Positions 12,429 to 64,000 of a stretch of DNA of 64,000 bases are shown here, piece by piece (position 1 is the first letter of the stretch; each line of letters begins with the position of its first letter). Source of the stretch: Cyanophora paradoxa CCMP329. Its lineage: Eukaryota > Plantae > Glaucophyta. The stretch is taken from positions 124,001-188,000 of the forward strand of contig QPMI01000516.1 of NCBI GenBank assembly GCA_004431415.1. Direction: 5' to 3'. The notes under the pieces were generated by a model that worked only from the letters and a program-made list of their open reading frames with translations, did not search any database and was not told the DNA's origin. The translations under genes and the position numbers were made by a program.

Positions 12429-15400
12429 ATGGCGCCCGGAGCGCCAGCTTCGAAGGTGAGCATTTCCTCTGCAGGCGGATACGCATCTCGGCGGCAGCTC
12501 CGCGCGGGCGACCCCTGATCGGCTCGCGCCCGCAGGTCGTGTTCGTGCCGTCGAAGAGCGAGGGTTACGTGCTCGCGGACGTGCTCACACAGAACGAGAG
12601 AGAAGCCCGCGTACGCCCGCGCGCCAAGGATGAGCCGGTGCGCAGCTTACGCTTCCGCCGCCCGCCCGGCCGGGCGCCCGCCGCCCGCCCGGCCGGGCGC
12701 CCGGCGCCCGCCGCCCGCCTGGAGAGCCCTTCCGCGAAGCTCATGGGCCGCACGCGCAGGAGCGATGGGTGCCGGTGCCCGAGCTCCTCCCGTCGAACCC
12801 GGAGGGCGCGGCGCCGCCGGACGACAACACGGCGCTCATGCACCTCAGCGGGGCGACGCTGCTGCACAACCTGCGCGCGCGGTACGCCCGCGACCAGGTC
12901 TACGTGCGCTCCTCCCCTCGCCTCCGCCCCGGGGCCCGGGCGCCTCGCCGGCGCCCCGTAGCTAGCTAGCCAGCCCAGCCCAGCTCTGACTGACCCCGCG
13001 CCCCGCCCCGCCTCGCGCGCGCGCGCGCCCCTCGCCTCCTCAGACGTACACGGTGGGCTCGCTCTCCGCCCCGCCCCGCCTCTTCTCGCTAACGCTCTCG
13101 CTCACGCGCGCGCTCACGCGCCCTCTCGTGCAGGCGTACATCCTCCTGGCGGTGAACCCGTACAAGCCGCTCCCCGTCTACGACGACGCCCGCATGGCCC
13201 GGTGCGCCGGAAAAGCCATCGGGCGGGCGGGATCCCGGAGGGATCTGCGCATCCGTATCGACTAGACTCTGACCGCGCGCGCGCAGGTACGCGGGGAAAG
13301 CGATCGGGCGGGAGGAGCCGCACGTCTTCGCGGTGGCGGACCGCGCGTACCGCCTCATGCGCGCCGAGGGCGCCGACCAGTCCATCGTCGTCAGGTGAGC
13401 GGCCCCGCCCGGCCCGGCCCGGCCGAGGCTTAACATACACGCCTTGCTTAAGCTTGGTCGGCCGAGGCTCAAGCTTAGAAGGCCTAGGAGGCGCGTCCCG
13501 GGCCGGCCTAGGGCTTAAGGCCTAAGCCTCGTTTTAAGCTCCGACTTGGCTAGCCGAGCCGCGCGCCCGCGGCCGGCTAAGGCCGTACCGGCCTACGAAG
13601 CTGGGCCCTTAGCTTCAAGCCATCGATTAGCTGCCGGAGCGGGCGGCGCGCCCTAGACCTAGCCTAGGCTTAAAGCCGCGCGAGCCGCATGCCCGCCCGC
13701 CCGCCCATCCGCCAGGCTCTTCTCGTCGGAATCTGACGGATCCTTTCTTCAGCGGCGAAAGCGGGGCGGGCAAGACGGAGACCAGCAAGGCGAGCGGTTT
13801 CAAGCTCGCCTGAGCTCCTAGCCGACTCGAATCTGACCCTGTCTATCTATCAGTACGCGATGCGGTACCTGGCGCACGTGGGGCGGGCGGCGGGGAGCGC
13901 CGACCTGGGCGAGCGCGTCCTCGACACGAACCCCATCCTCGAGGCCTTCGGCAACGCCAAGACCCTCCGCAACAACAACTCCTCCCGCTTCGTGCGCCCC
14001 CCCCCCCCCCCCCCCCCCCCGCCCCCGCCTACCCCTCCCCCTCCCCCCCCCGCCTCGAACGCTCTCTATCTCTCTGTCCTTCTCTCCCTCCGATACCACC
14101 ATCGCCCCCCCCCCCCCCCCTCTCCCCCCTCCCTTCTCTTCGTCTGACCCCCCCCCCCCCCCCCGGCAGGGCAAGTACATCAAGATCGAGTTCTCGCGGG
14201 ACGGCGCGGTCGCCGGCGCCTCCATCGTCACCTGTACGCTCCCCGACCCCCGCCCCGCCCCCCTCGCCCTCCTCTCCCTCCCGCCGGCCCCCACCCGACA
14301 TCTTATCTCAACGTCTTATCATCGCTTCCTCGCGCCCCGCCCCGCCCCGCCCCCCTCCTCCCCTTCTTCTCGCTGCCGAGCGATCTCTGCCACGCAGACC
14401 TGCTGGAGCGTTCGCGGGTGGCGCAGCAGGACGCCGGCGAGCGCTGCTACCACATCTTCTACCAGGTGCTAAAGTCTTAATCTCAGTTTCACCGGTTAAC
14501 CGGCCAAGAGTTAGCTAGAGCGCTCTGGGACCTAGCCTGGGAGCGAGTTAACGTTGCAATTAGCTTATATATATCATAGCTGGGATCTGGCATCTTCTAC
14601 CAGGTGCCGCTGTCCCAGTCTAAGTTGCACCGGTTAAGCGCTCTACTTAAGCTGGGAGCTAACCCAGGCCTGAGAGCTAGCTCATATAACGTAGCTGGGG
14701 CCTGGCTAACCCGACGCCTTCTGCCAGCTCTGCGCCGGCTCTTCCGCCGAGGAGCGCGCCGCCCTGCGCCTCGGGCCCGCGAAGGACTACCCCTGCCTCA
14801 GGTCCGACCGGCGTCCCCCCCCTTCTTATACGAGCCACGCCGCCTAAACCGAGCCACCGCAGCGCGGGCGGCTGCGTGGCGATCCCGGGAGTGGACGACG
14901 CCGCCGACTTCGAGAGAGTGAAGGTCCGTCCGCGTCCGCGTGCAGCAAGCCATAGAAGCAAGATTCTATGCAACGGACTCTAACAGTGCCCAAAGAACGG
15001 CAAACCCCTCGCTTATGATCACTTCGTCCGCAGGGGGCGATGGATCGCGTGGGGATCGGGGCGGGGGAGCGCGCCGACGCCTTCCGCGTTCTCGCCGCCC
15101 TCCTCCACCTCAGGTGACGGGCTCCGCCCCCCCCCCCCCCATCTCGCCTTGACCTGACCTCGCCGCTCTCCTCCTCCTCCGCCTCAGCCGCGTCTCCTTC
15201 GCCGCATCCGAATCCTCCGACGGCTCCGAGGTGCTGCCACTCGTTACGAAGAAGAGTTGATAAGACTCTAATTAATAAGACAATGTTGCTGTGATGCCTT
15301 GCCCAGATCTGATCGATATGGGGCAGGTGGCGGAGGCGGGGGCGCTGGCGACGGCGGCGGGGCTGCTGGGCCTCGACGAGGCGAGCTTCCGGCGCGTCCT

Positions 15401-18400
15401 CACCTACCGCACCATGGAGACCCGCGGCCAGGTGCGGAAGAACGAGCAGACGTGAAGTTATAGGGCTTTGGAACAGACCTTAACTTAATTAAACGCGCGG
15501 CCAGGTCGTCGAGATCCCGCTGAAGCCGGCCGAGGTACCCATCTCAGTTCATTCTGAAGAGGAGCTTCTCGAGGTTTGATTTGGTGTCCAACAGGCGGCG
15601 AACGCGCGGAACGCGCTGGCGAAGGCGGTCTACCAGCGCCTCTTCGACTGGCTTGTCGAGCGCGTCAACGAGGTGAGAAGGAAGCCTCGGATTCCCTCCC
15701 GAGGGAGGCGCGCTGAGGCTGCTGGGGCTCGCAGGGCCTCGGCGGGGGCCGGGCGGCCGGGGGCACGTGCATCGGCATCCTCGACATCTTCGGCTTCGAG
15801 TACTTCGAGGTGCGCCGGCGAGGCCCGCGATCAATTTAACCGATGAGACCCACGGGTTATAATCCTCCGCCCCTCCCCCCGGCGTCCCTCCCTCCCGCCC
15901 GACCGCCCCGCCCCGGCCCCTCACCCTTCTTCTTGCAGCGGAACAGCTTCGAGCAGCTGTGCATCAACTACGCGAACGAGAAGCTGCAGCAGTACTTCAA
16001 CGAGCAGGTCTTCAAGCAGGAGGAGGTGCCTCCCCCATCCCCCTGTCCAGTTCCAGTTTTCTAGCGCTCTGCGTGGATCTCTCCATCTGACTGCCGGGGC
16101 GCGCTCGCAGGAGATCTACGCGCGAGAGGGCATCCGCGCCGAGCGCGTCGAGTTCCAGGTCCGCCCCGCGCCCGCCTGCGCGCGCCCGCACCCGCCCCTT
16201 TCCCCTCGAATTCCGACCGGGGCGGCGGCGGCGGCAGGACAACGGGGCGACGATCGAGCTGATCGAGCGGCGCCCCGGGGGGCTCCTCCACGTCCTCGAG
16301 GAGGAGGGGCGCATGCCCTCGGGCTCCGACCGCTCCTTCTGCCGCAAGGTAAAGAAAGCGAAACGAAAATCAAATCATAGAAAGAGCAGCAAAACATCAT
16401 GACCTTGACTCGCCTCCTCCTCACTCCCTCCCCCGCAGATCCACGAGGCGCACCGGGCCGGGGGCCGCCTGGGGGCCCCCGCCAACGCCGGCCGCCGCGA
16501 GTACGGCTTCCTCACAACCGACGAGGCACGCCCCCATTCTCAGACTTATTATATGCCGTTACTCAGACTCGTATCATTTTAGAGTCTTATTATTCCTCAC
16601 CACCGACGAGGCCCGCCCCTTTTAATATTCTTCTTCAAGACCCCGTTATTTCGGAGTATTATTGGACCTAGATCTTATTATCGTATCATTTTAGAGTCTT
16701 GTTATTCCTCACCACCGACGATATTCAGAGTCTTATTTTAGAGTCTTATCGGACCTAGATCTTATTATCATTATCTGAGAATGCGCCCTTCTCATTTGTC
16801 TTCTCTTCTCCCTTTCCCGCCTCCCTCCCGCAGGGCTTCGTCGTGAAGCACTTCGCCGGCGACGTGCGCCCCCGCCCCCGCCCCCGCTGCCCCGCCCCGC
16901 CTTCGCCTTCAGCACCCTCGGAAGGCGGGGCGGGGCAGGCGATTCTTAACCGTCCCCCGCCTGTCCCGCCCTGCTCCCGGCCCCGCCCGACTCGGGCGGC
17001 CCCTCCTCCTCCCCCTCGCGCTCAGGTGACGTACGAGGCGGAGGGGTTCCTGGAGAAGAACAACGACTCCGTGCACCCCGACCTCCTCGCCCTCCTCCAG
17101 GCAAGCGAGCGAGCCAGCGAGCCCGGGACATTAACATTAGACCCGGAGCCCCTGCTTCTCGCCCTTGGGGGGCCGTTTATCTCAGGCTATCTAACTCGAG
17201 CTCGCCCCGCCCGCCCCGCAGCGCTCGACGGACGCGTTCGTGCGGCGGCTCGCCCCGGATCCCCCCGCCGCCCCCAAGGTGCCCCGCTGTTCCTCCCCGC
17301 GGCAGCCGCCCGTGACGGGTCGGATCGGACCGGTCCCGCCAGTTCGGCCCCAAGGACCGGTCGACGCGGTTCTCGTCGGTGGGCGGCAAGTTCGCGGCGC
17401 AGCTGCAGGGCCTCATGGCCGACCTCGCCCGCACCAGGTCAGGCGGCCACCGCTCGGGGCCGTGCCGTCCCCATCTAGGCATATATATCTAATCATCTAG
17501 ATTCTAAAACAGGGCTTGTCACTATCTAGACATCTCTAAACATCTAGACTCCACTTCTACAACACTCTTTGACATCTCTCTTTAGAAGTTTAAGAAGAAC
17601 CCCGAAGCTCATTCGCCGTCTTACTCGCCTGCGGTCGCCCGCAGCTCGCACTTCGTGCGGTGCATCAAGCCGAACGGGGAGCAGCGGCCGGGCTCCTTCT
17701 CCGGCGGCACCGTCCTCGCCCAGGTCCGCCGCGCTTAGGACTAAACTTAAGGTCTTAAGCTCGTCTGGGATCCGGATCTGACCTCGGGCCCGTCCCCCCG
17801 TCGTTCCTCGCGCAGCTTCGGGCGGGGGGCATGCTGGAGGCCCTAAGGCTTCTGCAGGCCGGGTGCGCACGCATGCGCCCATCCCAAAGCAGAATTCCAT
17901 GCTCGGCTGACTTTGTCCACCTGACTGACTCGGCCGCCAGCTTTCCCACGCGGTGCGCGGTGGAGGCCATACACGGCCGGTGCGTGCGCGCGCCACATCG
18001 TCAGACGAATGGCAACAGAGCAGGCACCTAAAGGCGACAATATTAATCAGCCCCCGACAATCAGGAGCCTCATGTAGAATCTATAAAACATTCAACGAAC
18101 TGCTCGCCTTAATTAGAATCTATCGCCTTCAATCTAAAGAGCTCTCGCGCTCCTTCAGGTACGCGCCGGCGATGCCGGAGGCGCTGCGGCGCTCGGGCCC
18201 CGCGCACTTCTGCGGGGCCCTCCTCGCCGCCCTCGACTTCAAAGAGAGCGACTTCCAGGTCGGCCTCACCAAGGTCCGCCTGTCCCTCCTTCTTTCTTTC
18301 TTTCTTATAAGACTTTAAGCTTCCATGATCGGCCTTTCTTAAGCTTTCTAAGGAGCATTTACAAGCCGTTAGCCGTTACAAGCTCCTAGGTGCGCCCTCC

Positions 18401-21400
18401 GCGGGCTAAGGCTAAGCAGTTATATCTGTCTCGGCTTTCCAATCCAAATTCAAATTTGCTTCCGGATCCGCCGCCCTTCGGCCGCTCCACTCACGCAGGC
18501 CCAACCCCGAGCCTCGGCCCGCGCGCGGCTCACGCCCCGGCAGGTGTTCTTCCGGGCGGGGCACCTTGCGCGGCTGGACGAGCTCGTCGGGAGCGCCGAC
18601 CAGGCCGCCCTCGACGCCGTCGTCGCCAAGGTCCTCGCCCCCGCCCCGCGGACGCCCGGGAATGAGATCTAGATGGAGATTACAAGCATATAATTAAGGC
18701 GGATACTATAGAATCTTAAAGTTCCTTATGCAAAGAGGTGCTGGCTGGCCTGGCCTGGCCTGGCCCCCAAAGGTCCTCGCTCCCCGCTGAGCCCGCCGAG
18801 GCTATATAGCCTAGCCCGGCCCAGCCCCCCGAGGATCAGCGGGGAGCGAGGACCTTGGCGACGACGGCGTCCTCGATCCTCGATCCGACGCCGTCGTCGC
18901 AAAGGCGCTCGGGCGGCTGGGCTTGGGCTGGGCTGGGCATGGGCATGGGCGGCGGCTGACGGGGTCGGGGTCGGCTGACGCCGTCGTCGCCAAGGTCCTC
19001 GCCTCGATCTAGATGAGATATAGGAGAGTGAGAATGATATATAGATGGAGATTACAAGACTACAAGCTCGAAGACTAGCCAACCGTTGACTAGGATAGCT
19101 GGGGCCCTGGCCTGAGCGGCGGCTGACGCGATCGTAACGCAGGTGAAGCGGTGGCTGGCCCGCAAGCGCTGGCAGCGCCTCATCGGCTTCCACCGCGCAT
19201 GCACCCGCGGTGCGCGCGCGCGCCCCTAAAAGACCGGCCCGACGTCCTATCAACGTTATCCAATTCGAATCTAACCGGCCGCTCCTTCTTAGCCCGTAGA
19301 AGTCTAAATACGTTTACGTTTATATAATATTTGAATAATTTACAGGGCCCACTATGATCTCATTCTTGGCAATCGAGCCGTCCTCATTTTCGCCGCAGTG
19401 GTCCGGCGCCTGCGGGAGATCCGCTCCCTCCGACTGTTCCTACGCGCCGCCGGCCTCGCCCGCGCCTACTGCGCGACCTTCAGGCGGGCCCTCCTCCGCG
19501 CCCGCCGCCGCCTCGCCGCCCGCGCCCTCCAGAGCGGTGCGTGTCCGGCCTTCGCGTAAGCTTGAGACAGCAGAGTCTGACGTTTTTGAAGTGTTCCGGA
19601 CGCACGTGGCCCGGGCCAAGCTCACCCGCGCCCGCCGGGCCGCGACCCGCATCCAGGCGCGCTACAGAGGCCACAGGGTGCGACGCGATGCGACCTCGAT
19701 TCGGTTTAGATCGTTCATTCATTCATGTTGCTCGCAGGTGCGGGCCCTCCTCGGGCCGGTGCTGGCGGAGCGGCGGGAGGCGCGGCGGGCGGAGCTGGCG
19801 GCGCGGGCCGCGGCGGAGCGGGAGCAAGCGGAGCGAAAGCGGCGCGAGGAGGCCGCCGCGTACCGCGAGGTGCCCCCTCCTTTCTTCTTCAAGTTCTCGT
19901 TCTTATATTATTAGAGTCTTGTTGGGCCTAGATATTATTACTAGTACTCTTATATCATTGAGAATCTCCTCAGGCGGCGGTGGAGAGCCTGCGGAGGAGG
20001 GACCAGGCCGCTGCCGAGCGGAGCCGGGCCCAGCAGCCTCAGCCGCAGCCTCAACCTTCTCTGCCAGCACCGACGACGACGACGGTGGCAGCACAGCCCG
20101 CCGCCGCTGCCGCCGCTGCCGCCGCCTCCGCGGGACCGGCGCACCCTCCCACCCCTCCTCCTCCCCCTCCCTCCCCTCCCCCGTCCTCCTCGGAGGCGCT
20201 GGGGGCCTTGGGCGAGGCGGTGGCGCGCATGGCGGGGAGCCTCCTCGAGCTGCAAACCGAGGTCCGCCCGCACCCTCCTCTAGCGCCCCCGAGGAGGACG
20301 GGGGAGGGATGGGCCTAAGGTGGCGTAGGCTAGGCTAGGAGGGGTGGGCCTAATGTGGCGCCTCCGCCTAAGGAGAGATAGCCTAAGGTGGCGTAGGCTA
20401 GGCTAGGCTGTGCGCTCCCCGAGGTCCAGGCCGAGGTCAGCTGCAGGCCGAGGTCTAAGGAGAGATAGCCGAGTCGTTGCTTGCTTTGTTGTCTCGGCCG
20501 AGCCGCTCCTCCTCCTGCGCCGCCCTCCGCCCTCCGCCCTCCGCCCTCCGCGTCCTCGCTCCTCCTGCGCCGCGTCGCCGGACCCCTCGGCCGCCTGAGG
20601 AGAGATAGCCTAAGGTGGCGTAGGCGTGGAGGTGGAGTTGAGGCTAGGCTGTGCGCTGGGTTTCCTACGTCGACTCTAACCGTCCCGGGCGGCTGGCGCG
20701 CGCAGGTCCGCGCCCTCCGCGCCGCCGCCGCCGCCAAGGCCGACGCCTCCGCGGCGAGTCGTTTGCTTCTTCTGCTATCTTGGCCGAGCCGCTCTACAGA
20801 GAGCCATCTTTCAAACGTCATGTTTGACTTCGGCGGTGCAGGTGGAGGCGCTGCGGGAGGAGGCGAGGGCGGCGGGGCGCGCCCGCGACGACTCCTTCGG
20901 AGAGCTCGAGGGGCGGGTGCGCCTTTCAGGGCGGGTCTACGAAGCTTGAATTTCACGCTTTCTAAGACCATGAAGCACGCATAAGCTTACGAGGAGCGCT
21001 TCCAGCGTAAACTGACGTCAAGAGCTTTAGAGCTAACGTTTAGCTTACGAGGAGCGCTTTCCACTTTGGGCTGACGCTGCGGGGCGGGCAGGTGAAAGGG
21101 GCGGAGGCGCTGCTCGCGAAGACGGCGGCGCGGGCGGAGGCGGCCGAGGCGGCCCTGAAGCTCCAGCGCGAGGAGGCGCGGGCCGAGGCGGCTCGGCTGA
21201 GGGCGGCGCTGGAGGGCGCCAGGGGCGCCTCCGAAGAGGCGGCGAAGGAGGCGCGCGCGGCGGCGGCCGAGGCGCGCGCGGCGCGGGCGGCGGCCGACGC
21301 GGCGGCGGCGGCGGGGCGGCGGAGGCGGCGGAGCGGGAGCGGCGGTGGGCGGAGGAGGCGGAGGCGCGGGCGGAGGCGGCGCAGAAGGCGCTGCGGGCGG

Positions 21401-24400
21401 CGATGGCTGTCTCTGAGGCCTCCCTCCTCTCCCGCATCGGCGCCCTCGAGGTGCGCCGCTGCCTGTCTTCTTTGGGTGGGGAAGGGAAAGAGAGGGAAGG
21501 GGCGGGGGGTTGAGTCAAGAGGGGGGAGGGGGAAGGGGGTTCGATGCGAGAGGGGGCACGAGAAGCAGCTCGCCGGTGCGCCCAACGAGTTGTTGCTCAG
21601 TGCTGCAAATGCTGCGCTGACACCAACTGCGATGGCCCAGGAAACGGCATCCGCGAACGAGGCCGCACTGTCGCGCGCACAGTCGGCATCGCTGGAGCAG
21701 GCGAGAACTGCAGAGGCGGCGGTGACCGCGGCCGTCTCGAGCGCCGAGGGACGGATCGCCGCGGCGGCGGCCGAGCGCGCGGCGCAAGCGGACGCGGCGC
21801 TGGCGGCGGCGGAGGAGCGGCTGCGGGCAACGCTCGCGGAGCAGGTGCGGGCCGCAGAGGCGGCGGCGGCCGCAGCGGTGGCGGATACCGAGCGGCGTCT
21901 CGGGGCGGCGGCGGCTGAGCGCGCGGCGCAAGCCGAGGCGGCGCTGGCGGCGGCGGAGGAGCGGCTGCGGGCGGCTCTTGCGGAGCAGGCGCGGGCCGGC
22001 GAGGCGGCGGCGGCCGCAGCGGTGGCGGATACCGAGCGGCGCCTCGGGCGGCGGCGGCCGAGCGCGCGGTGCAAGCGGACGCGGCGCTGGCGGCGGCGGA
22101 GGTGCGGCTGCGGGCGGCTCTCGCGGAGCAGGCGCAGGCCGGCGAGGCGGCGGCGGCCGCAGCGGTGAAAGATGCCGAGCGGCGAATCGCAGCGGCGGCG
22201 GCCGAGCGCGCGGCGCAAGCGGACGCGGCGCTGGCGGCGGCGGAGGAGCGGCTGCGGGCGGCTCTTGCGGAGCAGGCGCGGGCCGGCGAGGCGGCGGCGG
22301 CCGCAGCGGTGGAAGACGCCGAGCTGCGGATCGCGGCGGCGGCGGCCGAGCGCGCGGCGCAAGCCGAGGCGGCGCTGGCGGCGGCGGAGGAGCGCCTGCG
22401 GGCGGCGCTCGCGGAGCAGGCGGCGGCGCACAGCGAGCGGGGCCTAGCAGCGATGGGAGAGCTCGAGGCGCGGCTAGCAGCAGCGGGCGAGGCCGCAGCG
22501 CGCGAGGCGGCCGAGCTGAGGGCGGCCGTCGGCGCGCAGGAGCGGCAGGCGGCGGCCGCTGCGGAGTCGGCGGCGGAGCTGCGCAAGCGGGTCGAGGAGC
22601 TCGCGATGGCGGGCGCCGAGGCGGCGGGCGCGCGGGCGGCTGTGGAGGCAGCGGAGGCGCGGCTTCAGTCGGCATTGGCTGCGGGCGTCGAGGATGCCGA
22701 GAGGCGAATTGCGGCGGCAGCGACCGAGCGCGCGGCGCAAGCGGACGCGGCGCTGGCGGCGGCGGAGGAGCGGCTGCGGGCGGCACTGGCGGAGCGGGCG
22801 CGGGCCGGCGAGGCGGCGGCGGCCGCAGCGGTGGAAGATTCTGAGCGGCGTCTCGGGGCGGCGGCGGCCGAGCGCGCGGCACAGGCCGAGGCGGCGCTGG
22901 CGGCGGCGGAGGAGCGGCTGCGGGCGGCGCTCGCGGAGCAGGCGGCGGCGCACAGCGAGCGGGGCCTAGCAGCGATGGGAGAGCTCGAGGCGCGGCTAGC
23001 AGCAGCGGGCGAGGCCGCAGCGCGCGAGGCGGCCGAGCTGAGGTCGGCCGTCGGCGCGCAGGAGCGGCAGGCGGCGGCCGCAGCGGAGTCGGCGGCGGAG
23101 CTGCGCAAGCGGGTCGAGGAGCTCGCGGCGGCGGGCGCCGAGGCGGCGGGCGCGCGGGCGGCTGTGGAGGCAGCGGAGGCGCGGCTTCAGTCGGCATTGG
23201 CTGCGGGCGTCGAGGATGCCGAGAGGCGAATTGCGGTGGCAGCGACCGAGCGCGCGGCGCAAGCGGACGCGGCGCTGGCGGCGGCGGAGGAGCGGCTGCG
23301 GGCGGCACTGGCGGAGCGGGCGCGGGCCGGCGAGGCGGCGGCGGCCGCAGCGGTGGAAGATTCTGAGCGGCGTCTCGGGGCGGCGGCGGCCGAGCGCGCG
23401 GCGCAGGCCGAGGCGGCGCTGGCGGCGGCGGAGGAGCGGCTGCGGGCGGCACTGGCGGAGCGGGCGCGGGCCGGCGAGGCGGCGGCGGCCGCAGCGGTGG
23501 AAGATTCTGAGCGGCGTCTCGGGGCGGCGGCGGCCGAGCGCGCGGCGCAGGCCGAGGCGGCGCTGGCGGCGGCGGAGGAGCGGCTGCGGGCGGCTCTTGC
23601 GGAGCAGGCGCGGGCCGGCGAGGCGGCGGCGGCCGCAGCGGTGGAAGATTCTGAGCGGCGTCTCGGGGCGGCGGCGGCCGAGCGCGCGGCGCAAGCGGAC
23701 GCGGCGCTGGCGGCGGCGGAGGAGCGGCTGCGGGCGGCGCTCAGGGAGCAGGCGGCGGCGCACAGCGAGCGGGGTCTAGCAGCGATGAGAGAGCTCGAGG
23801 CGCGGCTAGCAGCAGCGGGCGAGGCCGCAGCGCGCGAGGCGGCCGAGCTGAGGGCGGCCGTCGGCGCGCAGGAGCGGCAGGCGGCGGCCGCTGCGGAGTC
23901 GGTGGCGGAGCTGCGCAAGCGGGTCGAGGAGCTCGCGGCGGCGGGCGCCGAGGCGGCGGGCGCGCGGGCGGCTGTGGAGGCAGCGGAGGCGCGGCTTCAG
24001 GCTGCCATCGCGTCGGCTCAACTCGATTCCGAGCGGCTGGCAGTCGAGCTCGAGGCGCGGCTCGGCGGGGATCTGGGCCGGCGCGCAGCCGAAGAGTCCG
24101 CGAGGCACTCGTTGAGCCTTGACGGCCTCTCACGGAGGGTGTGCGAATCTTCCTTTCGGGGTTTTCCCATCTATCAACCCATATATTTACATCTGTCGCA
24201 GGTTGCGGAGCTTGCGGGGTACAGGGACAGGGCGGAGGGGGAGGCCGGGGCCAGGGTGGCCGGCCTCGATGCGCGCCTCGCGGCCGTCGCCCGGCGGGTG
24301 CGGCGGGGCCAAAGCTCGAAACCGATCTTCGATCCAATCTTCTTGAGCGGTTTGGTCCGTCCCCGCAGGTCGACGAGCTGGCCGCCGAGGCCGCGAAGGC

Positions 24401-57159: not shown

Positions 57160-57364
57160 CACATTAATCGCGGAGGCGACCGCTGTGCACGTTAATCGCG
57201 GAGGCAACCGCTGATTGGATAATTCGAAGGGAAGGAAAAGAGGGGATGGTTCGACGTCGTTGCTAGAATAGTTCAGGTCGGGTCAGGTTGCTAGATTGGA
57301 TAATTCGAAGGAAAGGAAAAAGGGAAGGGAACGCGTCGACGTCGTTGCTAGAAAAGTTCAGGTC
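57160..57364. repeat. Local direct repeats (TTAATCGCGGAGGCRACCGCTG x2; ~65-bp GATTGGATAATTCGAAGG...AGTTCAGGTC x2)
   Basis: Directly visible in the intergenic region between convergent genes. Confidence 0.85.
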
Positions 57365-57914
57365 TAGAATCTAGAGGGAGCACATGCCCAGGGGAAGTTG
57401 GGCGGGAGGAAGTACGCGCAGCTGCAGCTGCCGGGGCTGCGCATGCCGAGCTCGAGAGGGGTGACACGGAGAATTGGGAAATTGGGAGGAGGAGCTCGAG
57501 CTTGCTGAAGAAAGGAACACCTGTAGAGGACGAACATGCCACTTCAAGGCTTTTGGTCCTGCCAGGCTGTGCTTAATTAGAGTACCTGCTTTCGGAGCGA
57601 GTCGCAATTGATCTCCCTCGAGTGCCTCGGTACCGGTGTGCCATCCCAAGTGCACGTGCACAGTGCACGTGCTTTTCTGGCCATGGGTCGACCTCGGTAC
57701 CGGTGTTTGTTCGGCTCTGACCTGCAGTCCTATGGCACCCGGCCCCCCTCCCCTCCCCATGGCCAGTAAACCTTTAGTTTCCCTCCCGTTCTCCCTCCGA
57801 GCCTCCCGTACGCGTGGAACTTTGGAAATCTGAAGCATAAAACGAAGTTGTAGCCAAAGTCTGGCTGCTACTAAAGCTGAAGCATAAGACGAAGTTGTAG
57901 CCAAAGTCTGGCTA

Positions 57915-60699: not shown

Positions 60700-63480
60700 G
60701 GACGCCGCCGACGCCTCCCGCCGACGCCGAGCGAGCCCGTGCAGCCCCGCCCGCGCCCCCCGCCCGCGCGCCGCGCGCCCCACCGCAGGAGGCCGCGCGC
60801 CGCCGCCGCCGGACGCCCAGGACGCGAGGGACGAGGCCGCTACGCCGCCGACGCCTCCGCCGACGCGAGCGAGCCCGTGCAGCCCGCCCGCGTCCCCCGC
60901 CCGCGCGCCGCGCGCCCCGCCGCAGGAGGCCGCGCGCCGCCGCCGCCGGACGCCCAGGACGCGAGGGACGAGGCCGCGACGCCGCCGACGCCTCCCGCCG
61001 ACGCCGAGCGAGCCCGTGCAGCCCCGCCCGCGTCCCCGCCCGCGCGCCGCGCGCCCCACCGCAGGAGGCCGCGCGCCGCCGCCGCCGGACGCCCAGGACG
61101 CGAGGGACGAGGCCGCTACGCCGCCGACGCCTCCCGCCGACGCCGAGCGAGCCCGTGCAGCCCCGCCCGCGCCCCCGCCCGCGCGCCGCGCGCCCCGCCG
61201 CAGGAGGCCGCGCGCCGCCGCCGCCGGACGCCCAGGACGCGAGGGGACGAGGCCGCGACGCCGCCGACGCCTCCCGCCGACGCCGAGCGAGCCCGTGCAG
61301 CCCGCCCGCGCCCCCCGCCCGCGCGCCGCGCGCCCCGCCGCAGGAGGCCGCGCGCCGCCGCCGCCGGACGCCCAGGACGCGAGGGGACGAGGCCGCGACG
61401 CCGCCGACGCCTCCCGCCGACGCCGAGCGAGCCCGTGCAGCCCGCCCGCGCCCCCGCCCGCGCGCCGCGCGCCCCACCGCAGGAGGCCGCGCGCCGCCGC
61501 CGCCGGACGCCCAGGACGCGAGGGGACGAGGCCGCGACGCCGCCGACGCCTCCCGCCGACGCCGAGCGAGCCCGTGCAGCCCCGCCCGCGTCCCCCGCCC
61601 GCGCGCCGCGCGCCCCGCCGCAGGAGGCCGCGCGCCGCCGCCGCCGGACGCCCAGGACGCGAGGGGACGAGGCCGCTACGCCGCCGACGCCTCCCGCCGA
61701 CGCCGAGCGAGCCCGTGCAGCCCCGCCCGCGCCCCCCGCCCGCGCGCCGCGCGCCCGCCGCAGGAGGCCGCGCGCCGCCGCCGCCGGACGCCCAGGACGC
61801 GAGGGACGAGGCCGCGACGCCGCCGACGCCTCCCGCCGACGCCGAGCGAGCCCGTGCAGCCCCGCCCGCGCCCCCGCCCGCGCGCCGCGCGCCCCGCCGC
61901 AGGAGGCCGCGCGCCGCCGCCGCCGGACGCCCAGGACGCGAGGGACGAGGCCGCGACGCCGCCGACGCCTCCCGCCGACGCCGAGCGAGCCCGTGCAGCC
62001 CCGCCCGCGCCCCCGCCCGCGCGCCGCGCGCCCCGCTGCAGGAGGCCGCGCGCCGCCGCCGCCGGACGCCCAGGACGCGAGGGGACGAGGCCGCTACGCC
62101 GCCGACGCCTCCCGCCGACGCCGAGCGAGCCCGTGCAGCCCCGCCCGCGCCCCCCGCCCGCGCGCCGCGCGCCCCGCCGCAGGAGGCCGCGCGACGCCGC
62201 CGCCGGACGCCCAGGACGCGAGGGGACGAGGCCGCGACGCCGCCGACGCCTCCCGCCGACGCCGAGCGAGCCCGTGCAGCCCCGCCCGCGCCCCCCGCCC
62301 GCGCGCCGCGCGCCCCGCTGCAGGAGGCCGCGCGCCGCCGCCGCCGAACGCCCAGGACGCGAGGGGACGAGGCCGCGACGCCGCCGACGCCTCCCGCCGA
62401 CGCCGAGCGAGCCCGTGCAGCCCCGCCCGCGCCCCCGCCGCGCGCCGCGCGCCCCGCCGCAGGAGGCCGCGCGACGCCGCCGCCGGACGCCCAGGACGCG
62501 AGGGACGAGGCCGCGACGCCGCCGACGCCTCCCGCCGACGCCGAGCGAGCCCGTGCAGCCCCGCCCGCGCCCCCGCCCGCGCGCCGCGCGCCCCGCCGCA
62601 GGAGGCCGCGCGCCGCCGCCGCCGGTCGCCCAGGACGCGAGGGGACGAGGCCGCTACGCCGCCGACGCCTCCGCCGACGCCGAGCGAGCCCGTGCAGCCC
62701 CGCCCGCGCCCCCGCCCGCGCGCCGCGCGCCCCGCCGCAGGAGGCCGCGCGACGCCGCCGCCGGACGCCCAGGACGCGAGGGACGAGGCCGCTACGCCGC
62801 CGACGCCTCCCGCCGACGCCGAGCGAGCCCGTGCAGCCCCGCCCGCGCCCCCCGCCCGCGCGCCGCGCGCCCCGCCGCAGGAGGCCGCGCGACGCCGCCG
62901 CCGGTCGCCCAGGACGCGAGGGGACGAGGCCGCTACGCCACCGACGCCTCCCGCCGACGCCGAGCGAGCCCGTGCAACCCCGCCCGCGCCCCCGCCCGCG
63001 CGCCGCGCGCCCCGCTGCAGGAGGCCGCGCGACGCCGCCGCGGTCGCCCAGGACGCGAGGGGACGAGGCCGCTACGCCGCCGACGCCTCCCGCCGACGCC
63101 GAGCGAGCCCGTGCAGCCCCGCCCGCGCCCCCGCCCGCGCGCCGCGCGCCCCGCCGCAGGAGGCCGCGCGCCGCCGCCGCCGGACGCCCAGGACGCGAGG
63201 GGACGAGGCCGCGACGCCGCCGACGCCTCCTGCCGACGCCGAGCGAGCCCGTGCAGCCCCGCCCGCGCCCCCGCCCGCGCGCCGCACGCCCCGCCGCAGG
63301 AGGCCGCGCGACGCCGCCGCCGGTCGCCCAGGACGCGAGGGACGAGGCCGCTACGCCACCGACGCCTCCCGCCGACGCCGAGCGAGCCCGTGCAACCCCG
63401 CCCGCGCCCCCGCCCGCGCGCCGCGCGCCCTGCCGCAGGAGGCCGCGCGACGCCGCCGCCGGTCGCCCAGGACGTGAGGG
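60700..63480. repeat. GC-rich tandem satellite, ~139-140-bp unit, ~20 copies
   Basis: Unit ACGCCGCCGACGCCTCCCGCCGACGCCGAGCGAGCCCGTGCAGCCCC...CGCAGGAGGCCGCGCG...GGACGCCCAGGACGCGAGGG(G)ACGAGGCCGC recurs every ~139 nt. Confidence 0.97.
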
Positions 63481-64000
63481 GGACCCCGCTGCTGTCGGCC
63501 CGCCCCCCGCCACCACCTTGCCGACGCCAGCCGGGGGCCTGCATATGCATGCACTACAGCTGGATCTCTAGCCTGCCGTCCCTCGACTGCCCATGCAAGC
63601 AGACGCACGCACGCCGAGCATATGCATGCACATGCATCCACAGACAAAATCACCGACCTCAGGCATCTGCCCACGGACAATTGTTAACGCTAGCTACAGC
63701 TAGCTGTAGTCCTAAGACAGCCCAAACTCTGACCCGGGGGAGGAACAACCGGACGGGTACAGCAGTCAGCACCCTGGACGGCAATCCATTCGCACCGCTG
63801 GCGCGGCTGGGCGGCCGGATGGCGCCTGACGACGATGCTGACAGCAACGACGACCCCAACGCGGCGGCTGACCCCCGAACTGGCCGTGGCCCGGAAACCG
63901 GGCCGGGATCGAAGCGACAACGCCCGCAGTCGGCAGAGCCGGCCACCCCGTCCCGCCGCCACACGGAGAAGTCTATGCGTGGATACAGGCCGGGCGACAC

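What the first reader, a model, noticed from the sequence alone, without database searches (positions are those of the whole stretch)
13202..13312. Myosin intron begins with a decayed copy of the next exon (possible intron birth by tandem duplication)
The intron starts GTGCGCCGGAAAAGCCATCGGGCGGG (13202-13227). The downstream exon starts GTACGCGGGGAAAGCGATCGGGCGGG (13287-13312). That is 22/26 identity in the same frame (CAGKAIGR vs YAGKAIGR). This is the footprint predicted by the tandem-genomic-duplication model of intron gain, for which clear natural examples are scarce.
Basis: partly seen in the sequence, partly recalled or inferred. Interest (0 to 1): 0.8.

Follow-up and report, generated by a model that had tools for sequence, protein, structure and literature searches.

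The report
Myosin intron flanked by exon-copy repeat
An 85-base intron in a myosin gene of the alga Cyanophora paradoxa begins with a real, slightly decayed 27-30-base copy of the start of the next exon.

Summary
The other 28 introns of the gene score 4-11 of 26, and the empirical chance is about 1e-4 per intron.

The intron 13202-13286 is needed to keep the myosin motor collinear. The published Cyanophora paradoxa model tig00020951_g16443.t1 splices it exactly there.

The classical tandem-duplication model does not fit. The remaining 55-59 nt of the intron are unrelated to the exon (15/59 identical; Fisher p = 6e-7), and they supply the branch site and the AG. The layout is repeat-insert-repeat.

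My best reading (about 0.5) is one insertion-with-duplication event that made the intron, with the donor coming from the copied exon start. The main rival (about 0.3) is an older intron of about 60 nt that was lengthened by a templated copy placed just behind its donor. This gene and genome have many such junction "echoes".

Six distant myosin genes lack an intron at this site. DNA of the close paralogues and RNA reads were out of reach, so the age is untested.

It is a known kind of footprint with an unusually long repeat. Earlier notes of this scan describe similar cases elsewhere in this genome.

The parts
13134..13201 (+). Upstream myosin exon ([22 protein letters not shown] plus 2 nt of the Arg codon). 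It ends in phase 2.
   Evidence: Pfam Myosin_head profile positions 34-52. tblastn of paralogue P0002 residues 97-118. Annotated model P0421.
13202..13286 (+). The 85-nt GT-AG intron, phase 2. The donor is GTGCGC, the commonest donor of this gene. There is an in-frame TAG at 13263-13265.
   Evidence: Pfam positions run 34-52, then 56-90, with no gap across it. The homology-guided splice map recovers it. The published model P0421 reads ...[21 protein letters not shown]... across it.
13201..13230 (+). Repeat copy A (intronic): a decayed copy of the start of the next exon.
   Evidence: the repeat finder D1, 25/30 identical to copy B at spacing 85. Of the four mismatches in the 26-nt core, three fall on third codon positions of the exon frame. 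The fourth is donor position +3 (A in the exon, G in the intron).
13231..13285 (+). Unique part of the intron (the 'insert'). It carries the CTGAC branch-site motif at 13269-13273 and the acceptor region ending in CAG.
   Evidence: Ungapped identity to exon 13313-13371 is 15/59, and the best gapped local match is 9 nt (80 of 1000 shuffles reach it). There is no significant direct or inverted match within 1 kb or in the window. CTGAC sits 13-22 nt before the AG in at least 7 introns of the gene.
13286..13315 (+). Repeat copy B: the last intron base plus the first 29 nt of the exon. This is the functional copy and encodes (R)YAGKAIGRE.
   Evidence: The aromatic residue and the G-K-x-x-G pattern are conserved in paralogues and other myosins (RYRGKSIGK and similar). 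Pfam positions 56-90.
13287..13394 (+). Downstream myosin exon ([35 protein letters not shown]).
   Evidence: Pfam Myosin_head E = 4.9e-8. 75% identical to P0002 residues 119-154.
15432..15504 (+). Second intron of the same gene with an exact-flank repeat. The 14-nt motif ACNCGCGGCCAG|GT occurs at 15420-15433 and 15493-15506 (13/14), with the splice sites inside the repeat.
   Evidence: Among 28 CAGGT...CAGGT pairs on this strand, only three have at least 8/9 upstream matches.

Best explanation
The intron was created, or at least given its present boundaries, by one local DNA-repair event in a previously continuous coding stretch (...ATGGCCCG|GTACGCGGG...).

In that event about 27-30 nt of the target were duplicated and about 55-58 nt of unrelated DNA ended up between the two copies, giving repeat-insert-repeat.

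- The left copy begins with G|GTACGC. That hexamer serves as a donor elsewhere in this gene, so the copy could act as the 5' splice site at once.
- The insert supplies a CTGAC branch site and the CAG acceptor.
- Splicing therefore removes the left copy plus the insert (85 nt, the genome's mean intron size) and restores the original message.
- Since then the copies have drifted apart by about 15%. The exon copy differs only at synonymous sites. The intron copy changed at donor position +3 to the consensus GTGCGC.

Shown: the repeat, its exact register with the splice sites, the unrelated insert, the need for splicing, and the absence of this intron position in six distant myosins.

Inferred: that no intron stood here before the event, and the repair mechanism itself (a staggered break with fill-in, or polymerase-theta-type templated synthesis).
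For: - The repeat is 25/30 identical at a spacing equal to the intron length. It is an outlier among the gene's 29 introns (22/26 against 4-11; null 1.2e-4). Donor-likeness does not explain it.
- The left edge of the copy coincides within 1 nt with both the donor and the first exon base. A birth event predicts exactly this. For a duplication placed at random in an old intron it is improbable. The window holds about 68 short local repeats outside the arrays. I estimate under 2% that one of them falls in this exact register by random placement; this is my own calculation.
- The rest of the intron is unrelated to the exon (15/59; Fisher p = 6e-7).
- GTACGC is a working donor in this gene (intron 14234).
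- The Pfam and paralogue alignments are collinear only if the 85 nt are removed, and the published model splices it.
- No intron stands at this site in Amborella and Closterium class XI myosins, Nematostella and Caenorhabditis auriculariae class VI myosins, or Thraustotheca and Pavlovales myosins. The neighbouring IY|TYT phase-0 intron is shared by four of these six.
- A second intron of the gene (15432-15504) has the same exact-flank layout.
- New introns in Daphnia carry the same footprint with 4-12 bp repeats (PMC4202315).
Against: - No close relative's genomic DNA could be examined, so 'no intron before the event' is untested.
- This gene has about 29 introns, most of them not shared with the distant myosins. 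Absence there says little about recency.
- A 27-30 nt target duplication is much longer than the 4-12 bp seen in Daphnia.
- The insert already has a well-formed branch site and acceptor. That is easier to explain if it is the remains of an older intron. Without copy A, an intron of about 60 nt would remain, the same size as the shortest introns of this gene (60-64 nt).
- No source for the insert was found in the window.
- Junction copies inside pre-existing introns are common in this gene (introns 14466, 16526 and 18631). Local duplication into old introns is therefore a frequent background process.
- About 15% divergence means the event is not very recent.
- No RNA reads were available.
Confidence: 0.5

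Rival explanations
1. An older intron lengthened by a junction 'echo'. A short intron of about 58-61 nt already stood at this position. A break just behind its donor was repaired by copying about 25-27 nt from the start of the next exon, primed on the GGT shared by the donor junction and the acceptor junction. The repair then rejoined at a CGGG microhomology. The copy happened to supply acceptable donor positions +3 to +6, so splicing went on.
For: - The unique part has a complete branch site and acceptor. With GT added it would be about 61 nt, the size of the gene's smallest introns.
- Microhomologies GGT (left) and CGGG (right) sit at the two edges of the copy.
- Three long introns of this gene (14466-14727, 16526-16833, 18631-19142) contain copies of their own exon end plus donor.
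- The window has about 68 short local repeats outside the arrays.
- Earlier scan notes report many such echoes of 18-52 nt in other genes of this genome.
Against: - The clear echoes elsewhere in the gene span the junction (exon end plus intron start) and lie inside the intron. Here the copy holds exon sequence only.
- It starts within 1 nt of the exon boundary and abuts the donor exactly. Those are two coincidences unless the break fell right at the donor.
- Six distant myosins have no intron at the position.
Confidence: 0.3
2. Chance resemblance in a GC-rich, low-complexity genome. The exon start merely looks like a donor, and GGGCGGG is a common motif.
For: - GGGCGGG-type words are frequent in the window.
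- The exon start GTACGC matches the donor consensus.
Against: - Empirical nulls drawn from the same sequence give 6e-5 to 3e-4 per test.
- After conditioning on donor-like hexamers, the next 20 nt match 17/20 against at most 10/20 in 39 controls.
- The register equals the intron length exactly.
Confidence: 0.08
3. Classical tandem duplication of an 85-nt exon segment (Rogers model), with later decay of the intronic copy.
For: The period of the repeat equals the intron length, and the donor GT derives from exon sequence.
Against: - Identity is 22/26 in the first part but 15/59 (random level, 0.28 expected) in the rest. That heterogeneity is not expected for neutral decay (Fisher p = 6e-7).
- The exon segment that would correspond to the intron's end finishes in GGGC, not AG.
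- The best gapped match of the remainder is 9 nt (80 of 1000 shuffles reach it).
Confidence: 0.05
4. Copy A is kept because it is used. An alternative weak GC-AG intron (13227-13314) would give an isoform reading ...[16 protein letters not shown]...
For: - Three of the four mismatches are at third codon positions.
- A GC at 13227 and an AG at 13313-13314 are in frame.
- About 4 of the 29 mapped introns of this gene use GC donors.
Against: - The isoform would replace the conserved aromatic residue by Cys and drop one residue.
- GCGGGA is a poor donor.
- The strong CAG at 13284-13286 lies upstream of the alternative acceptor.
- The third-position bias is not significant (p about 0.11, my calculation). 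It is also expected if the exon copy drifts only at silent sites.
Confidence: 0.02

Closest known systems
New introns formed by insertion at staggered double-strand breaks in Daphnia pulex (Li et al. 2009; PMC4202315)
   Same: [quoted passage not shown] The inserted sequence is unrelated to the flanks. One splice site is drawn from the duplicated exon sequence.
   Different: The Daphnia repeats are 4-12 bp; here the repeat is 27-30 nt. The Daphnia cases are proven by presence/absence polymorphism, which is not available here. The copies here have already diverged by about 15%.
[quoted passage not shown]
   Same: Duplicated exon sequence provides the 5' splice site. The message is restored by splicing out one copy.
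   Different: Only about a third of the intron is duplicated exon. The AG, the branch site and the tract before it are not copies of the neighbouring exon or of the neighbouring intron. In the potato case they were inherited from the upstream intron.
Introners and transposon-derived introns (Micromonas, Aureococcus and others)
   Same: An insertion flanked by a target-site duplication in which the duplication contributes a splice site (this description rests on my own knowledge).
   Different: No second copy of the insert exists in the 64-kb window and it has no terminal inverted repeats. The repeat is far longer than the few-bp duplications of introners. The rest of the genome could not be searched.
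Splice-junction 'echoes' in Cyanophora paradoxa introns
   Same: Same genome, same size class of copied segment (18-52 nt), same short-range copying. s1-603120 describes the mirror image: the intron's 3' end is a 28-nt copy of the preceding exon's end.
   Different: Most echoes span the junction and lie inside long introns, which shows that the intron came first. Here the copy is exon-only and in exact register with both splice sites.

Membership tests
[quoted passage not shown] | The whole intron is a duplicate of adjacent exon sequence | tested here: not met
   22/26 identical at the start, but 15/59 (random level) for the remainder. Fisher p = 6e-7.
[quoted passage not shown] | Both GT and AG derive from a duplicated exonic AGGT | tested here: not met
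   The GT comes from the copied exon start. The AG lies in the unrelated part, and the upstream exon ends in CG, not AG.
[quoted passage not shown] | The intron is absent at this position in relatives | tested here: inconclusive
   Absent in six distant myosin genes. Genomic DNA of the paralogues and of other glaucophytes could not be reached.
Insertion with target duplication at a staggered break (Daphnia type) | [quoted passage not shown] | tested here: met
   13201-13230 versus 13286-13315, 25/30, spacing equal to the intron length.
Insertion with target duplication at a staggered break (Daphnia type) | The sequence between the repeats is unrelated to the flanking exons | tested here: met
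   No significant direct or inverted match to 1 kb on either side.
Insertion with target duplication at a staggered break (Daphnia type) | Intron-less allele or orthologue (proof of gain) | not testable with these tools
   No other Cyanophora strain or species DNA is in the collections. The metagenome scan with P0421 found nothing.
Introner / transposon-derived intron | Many near-identical copies of the intron elsewhere in the genome | tested here: inconclusive
   None in the 64-kb window apart from low-complexity words. The rest of the genome cannot be searched, and a look-up by sequence in the scan notes came back blank.
Junction echo in a pre-existing intron | The copy contains both exon and intron sides of the junction, which would show that the intron came first | tested here: not met
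   The copy starts at the last intron base and first exon base. The bases upstream do not match: 13198-13200 reads CCC against GCA at 13283-13285. By contrast, the echoes in introns 14466, 16526 and 18631 do include the donor.
Myosin motor domain (Pfam PF00063) | Collinear match of the exons to the Myosin_head profile | tested here: met
   Exons hit profile positions 2-29, 34-52, 56-90, 106-152 and 379-406. About 800 residues align to paralogue P0002.

The most novel reading that the evidence does not exclude
Cyanophora paradoxa is in an active phase of intron creation and growth driven by one short-range copy-and-paste repair process (copies of about 14-50 nt placed 50-300 nt away). When that process hits an exon next to a donor-like word, it makes a ready-to-splice intron flanked by an unusually long (about 27-30 nt) target duplication. 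This locus, intron 15432-15504 of the same gene and the mirror-image case s1-603120 would be three such births. If so, the alga would be a natural system, next to Daphnia and the introner-bearing algae, for watching intron origin. A more speculative variant is that the insert is a 5'-truncated retrocopy of an excised intron RNA. It ends exactly in ...CAG next to the downstream repeat, as a target-primed insertion would leave it.
Probability: 0.25. Interest if true: 0.7.

Novelty: new member of a known kind. Interest (0 to 1): 0.45.

Why it matters
How new spliceosomal introns arise is a long-standing question with few caught-in-the-act examples. This locus shows a clean repeat-insert-repeat footprint in exact register with both splice sites, in a gene with about 29 introns and a genome averaging 9.2 introns per gene (PMC6704402). 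The repeat is two to three times longer than those described in Daphnia.

On its own the locus cannot separate intron birth from intron lengthening. The same gene holds a second exact-flank intron and three introns with internal junction copies, and the scan has flagged similar cases elsewhere in this genome. Together these suggest that a genome-wide census in Cyanophora could measure how often local duplication makes introns and how often it merely lengthens them.

Tried and rejected
- Whole-intron tandem duplication: rejected by the identity heterogeneity.
- Insert built from inverted or direct copies of nearby sequence: local alignments to 1 kb on each side, on both strands, are not above shuffles. 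The best is 14/16 with the branch-site region of intron 13790-13853 (26 of 300 shuffles reach it).
- Insert as a repeated element: blastn-short against the window gives only GC-rich low-complexity words. A look-up by sequence in the scan notes was blank.
- Alternative canonical splice registers inside the repeat: no other GT/GC...AG pair at equal offsets (read).
- The window's own full-length protein or transcripts: searches with P0002, P0004 and P0002:70-200 returned only the 180-aa fragment model P0421. They found no Logan or other transcript-derived fragments of this gene, so there is no RNA-level evidence.
- Genomic DNA of the paralogues: P0002 and P0421 are not on record, and the clusters hold only EukProt entries.
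- Metagenome scan with P0421: no relatives. The exon alone was too short for that tool.
- A recurrent 85-nt spacing: three independent repeat pairs in the window share it, but I estimate a chance probability of about 0.1, so I do not rely on it.
- The microexon ACGTACACG resembling the next exon's start GCGTACATC: explained by the conserved peptide TYT-AYI, which the paralogues also have. It is not a duplication.
Exons were searched one by one by reference, and database proteins (P0002, P0421) served as guides.

Full report
**What is there.** The window is GC-rich eukaryotic DNA. Between about 12.5 and 19.5 kb the + strand carries a myosin gene cut into very small exons. Single exons, translated by reference, hit Pfam Myosin_head collinearly:
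- 12769-12903 hits profile positions 2-29.
- 13134-13199 hits positions 34-52.
- 13288-13392 hits positions 56-90.
- 13860-13991 hits positions 106-152.

Between the second and third of these lies 13202-13286. It is 85 nt long, runs GT...AG in phase 2, and has an in-frame TAG at 13263-13265. The profile positions run on without a gap, so the 85 nt must be removed.

**Source.** An exhaustive search with exon 13860-13991 and a cluster look-up gave three Cyanophora paradoxa myosins from EukProt as the nearest proteins. The closest is P0002 (tig00020614_g12171.t1), at 60-83% identity per exon.

A later word search returned P0421, tig00020951_g16443.t1. It matches the window at 90-98% over four exon blocks. 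The window is therefore contig tig00020951 of the published C. paradoxa assembly (PMC6704402).

It also wrongly keeps the stop-free 81-nt intron 13053-13133 and ends after 13392, so the myosin is chopped in the annotation.

Exons were searched singly by reference, and database proteins served as guides.

**The observation.** The repeat finder reports 13201-13230 against 13286-13315 as 25/30 identical with spacing 85.

I mapped 29 introns of the gene with P0002 as a guide. For each I scored intron start against next exon start.
- This intron scores 22/26 and the other 28 score 4-11.
- Random positions with the same lengths reach 22 with p = 1.2e-4.
- The rate over all position/offset pairs is 6e-5 in the gene region and 3e-4 window-wide.

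The exon start GTACGC looks like a donor, so I conditioned on donor-like hexamers at both places. The next 20 nt match 17/20 here and 1-10 in the other 39 pseudo-introns. The repeat is real.

**Why it is not the classical tandem duplication.** If an 85-nt exon unit had been duplicated, 13231-13285 should be a decayed copy of 13316-13370. It is not.
- Identity in the remainder is 15/59, against a random expectation of 0.28.
- That contrasts with 22/26 in the first part (Fisher p = 6e-7).
- The best gapped match is a 9-mer, and 80 of 1000 shuffles reach its score.

The acceptor AG and a CTGAC branch-site motif (13269-13273) lie in this unrelated part. CTGAC sits 13-22 nt before the AG in at least seven introns of the gene. 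The layout is repeat (27-30 nt), insert (55-58 nt), repeat. Splicing removes the first repeat plus the insert.

**Details of the copies.** Of the four mismatches in the core, three are at third codon positions of the exon frame. The fourth is at donor position +3: A in the exon (TAC, the conserved Tyr) and G in the intron.

The intronic hexamer is now GTGCGC, the commonest donor in this gene. The exon form GTACGC is itself used as a donor by intron 14234. The paralogues and other myosins keep an aromatic residue and G-K-x-x-G here, so copy B is the functional one.

**Is the position old?** I fetched six annotated myosin genes and mapped their introns exactly:
- Amborella class XI
- Closterium class XI
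- Thraustotheca
- Caenorhabditis auriculariae class VI
- Nematostella class VI
- Pavlovales sp.

None has an intron at this site. Four of them share the phase-0 intron at IY|TYT, which in the window is 12904-13043. The test is weak, however, because most of this gene's roughly 29 introns are unshared with these relatives.

The decisive comparison is with the Cyanophora paralogues and other glaucophytes, and it could not be made. Their genomic DNA is not on record, a metagenome scan found nothing, and no transcript-derived fragments of this gene turned up.

**Birth or lengthening?** Earlier notes of this scan report that C. paradoxa introns often hold copies of their own splice junctions. I checked this gene.
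- Intron 14466-14727 holds an exact copy of its exon end plus GT, 138 nt downstream.
- Intron 16526-16833 holds two to three copies of its exon end plus GC donor.
- Intron 18631-19142 holds direct and inverted copies.
- Outside the two big tandem arrays the window has about 68 short local repeats.

Short-range copying into existing introns is therefore common. That yields a serious rival: an older intron of about 60 nt, the size of the gene's shortest introns, received a templated copy of the exon-2 start just behind its donor. The copy would have been primed on the GGT shared by both junctions and rejoined at a CGGG microhomology.

Three points count against this rival.
- The clear echoes span the junction and lie inside the intron, whereas this copy is exon-only.
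- Its left edge coincides within 1 nt with both the donor and the exon boundary.
- I estimate under 2% that any of the window's local repeats would fall in that register by random placement.

A second intron of the gene, 15432-15504, shows the same exact-flank geometry with a 14-nt repeat containing CAG|GT.

I put birth by an insertion-with-duplication event at about 0.5. Lengthening of an old intron gets about 0.3, chance 0.08, the classical tandem model 0.05 and a dual-use alternative splice 0.02.

**Comparison with what is known.** The footprint is the one described for new Daphnia introns formed at staggered breaks, where the exon repeat at the opposite intron end is 4-12 bp (PMC4202315). 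Here it is 27-30 nt. It shares with the tandem-duplication cases (PMC3265369, PMC4974935) only the recruitment of a donor from duplicated exon sequence.

I found no paper on intron gain in Cyanophora. The genome paper gives 9.2 introns per gene and a mean intron length of 86 bp.

The scan has already flagged the same class of footprint on other DNA of this genome (for example s1-603120, the mirror image with a 28-nt exact copy).

**Verdict.** It is a new member of a known kind and of moderate interest, and it would become valuable as part of a genome-wide census.

Noticed in passing
window 15420-15506: Intron 15432-15504 (73 nt) of the same myosin gene is flanked by a 14-nt direct repeat, ACNCGCGGCCAG|GT (13/14), with both splice sites inside the repeat. 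This is the layout the AGGT-duplication model predicts. The 59 nt between the copies are AT-richer and unrelated.
   Followed up: partly
window 13044-13133: A 9-nt microexon (ACGTACACG, coding TYT) lies between introns 12904-13043 and 13053-13133. The published model tig00020951_g16443.t1 (P0421) reads through the stop-free 81-nt second intron, adding 27 spurious residues. It also ends after 13392, so the annotation chops this roughly 7-kb, roughly 29-intron myosin gene into pieces.
   Followed up: partly
window 12904-13043; L001, L002, L004, L005: The phase-0 intron between IY and TYT of the myosin motor is shared by Cyanophora, Amborella, Closterium, Nematostella and Caenorhabditis auriculariae. 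It is probably a very old intron position.
   Followed up: partly
window 16506-16722: Intron 16526-16833 holds two to three copies of about 27 nt that span its own exon end plus GC donor (TTCCTCACMACCGACGAGGCMCGCCCC). The first pair is 85 nt apart with unrelated sequence between, the same geometry as the finding.
   Followed up: partly
window 14452-14603: Intron 14466-14727 contains an exact 14-nt copy of its exon end plus donor (ATCTTCTACCAG|GT), 138 nt downstream. It is an unused decoy donor.
   Followed up: no
window 57246-57367: In another gene there is a 37-nt direct repeat (84% identical), again spaced 85 nt, that includes ...AGTTCAG|GT. It is a possible further exact-flank or junction-echo intron.
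   Followed up: no
window 13790, 16526, 17101 (and the doubtful 15094): About 4 of the 29 homology-mapped introns of the myosin gene use GC-AG (GCGAGC, GCACGC, GCAAGC).
   Followed up: no
window 21000-24100 and 60700-64000: There are two large tandem arrays, with periods of about 144 nt and 139-141 nt. They dominate every repeat scan and had to be masked for the statistics.
   Followed up: no
window 12500-19500: The nearest non-glaucophyte relatives of this myosin and of its paralogue P0002 are class VI-like myosins (Capsaspora MYO6 at about 50%) and protist myosins with RUN or PH tails. C. paradoxa has at least four related myosin genes: this one (of which P0421 is the annotated fragment), P0002, P0004 and P0006.
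   Followed up: no
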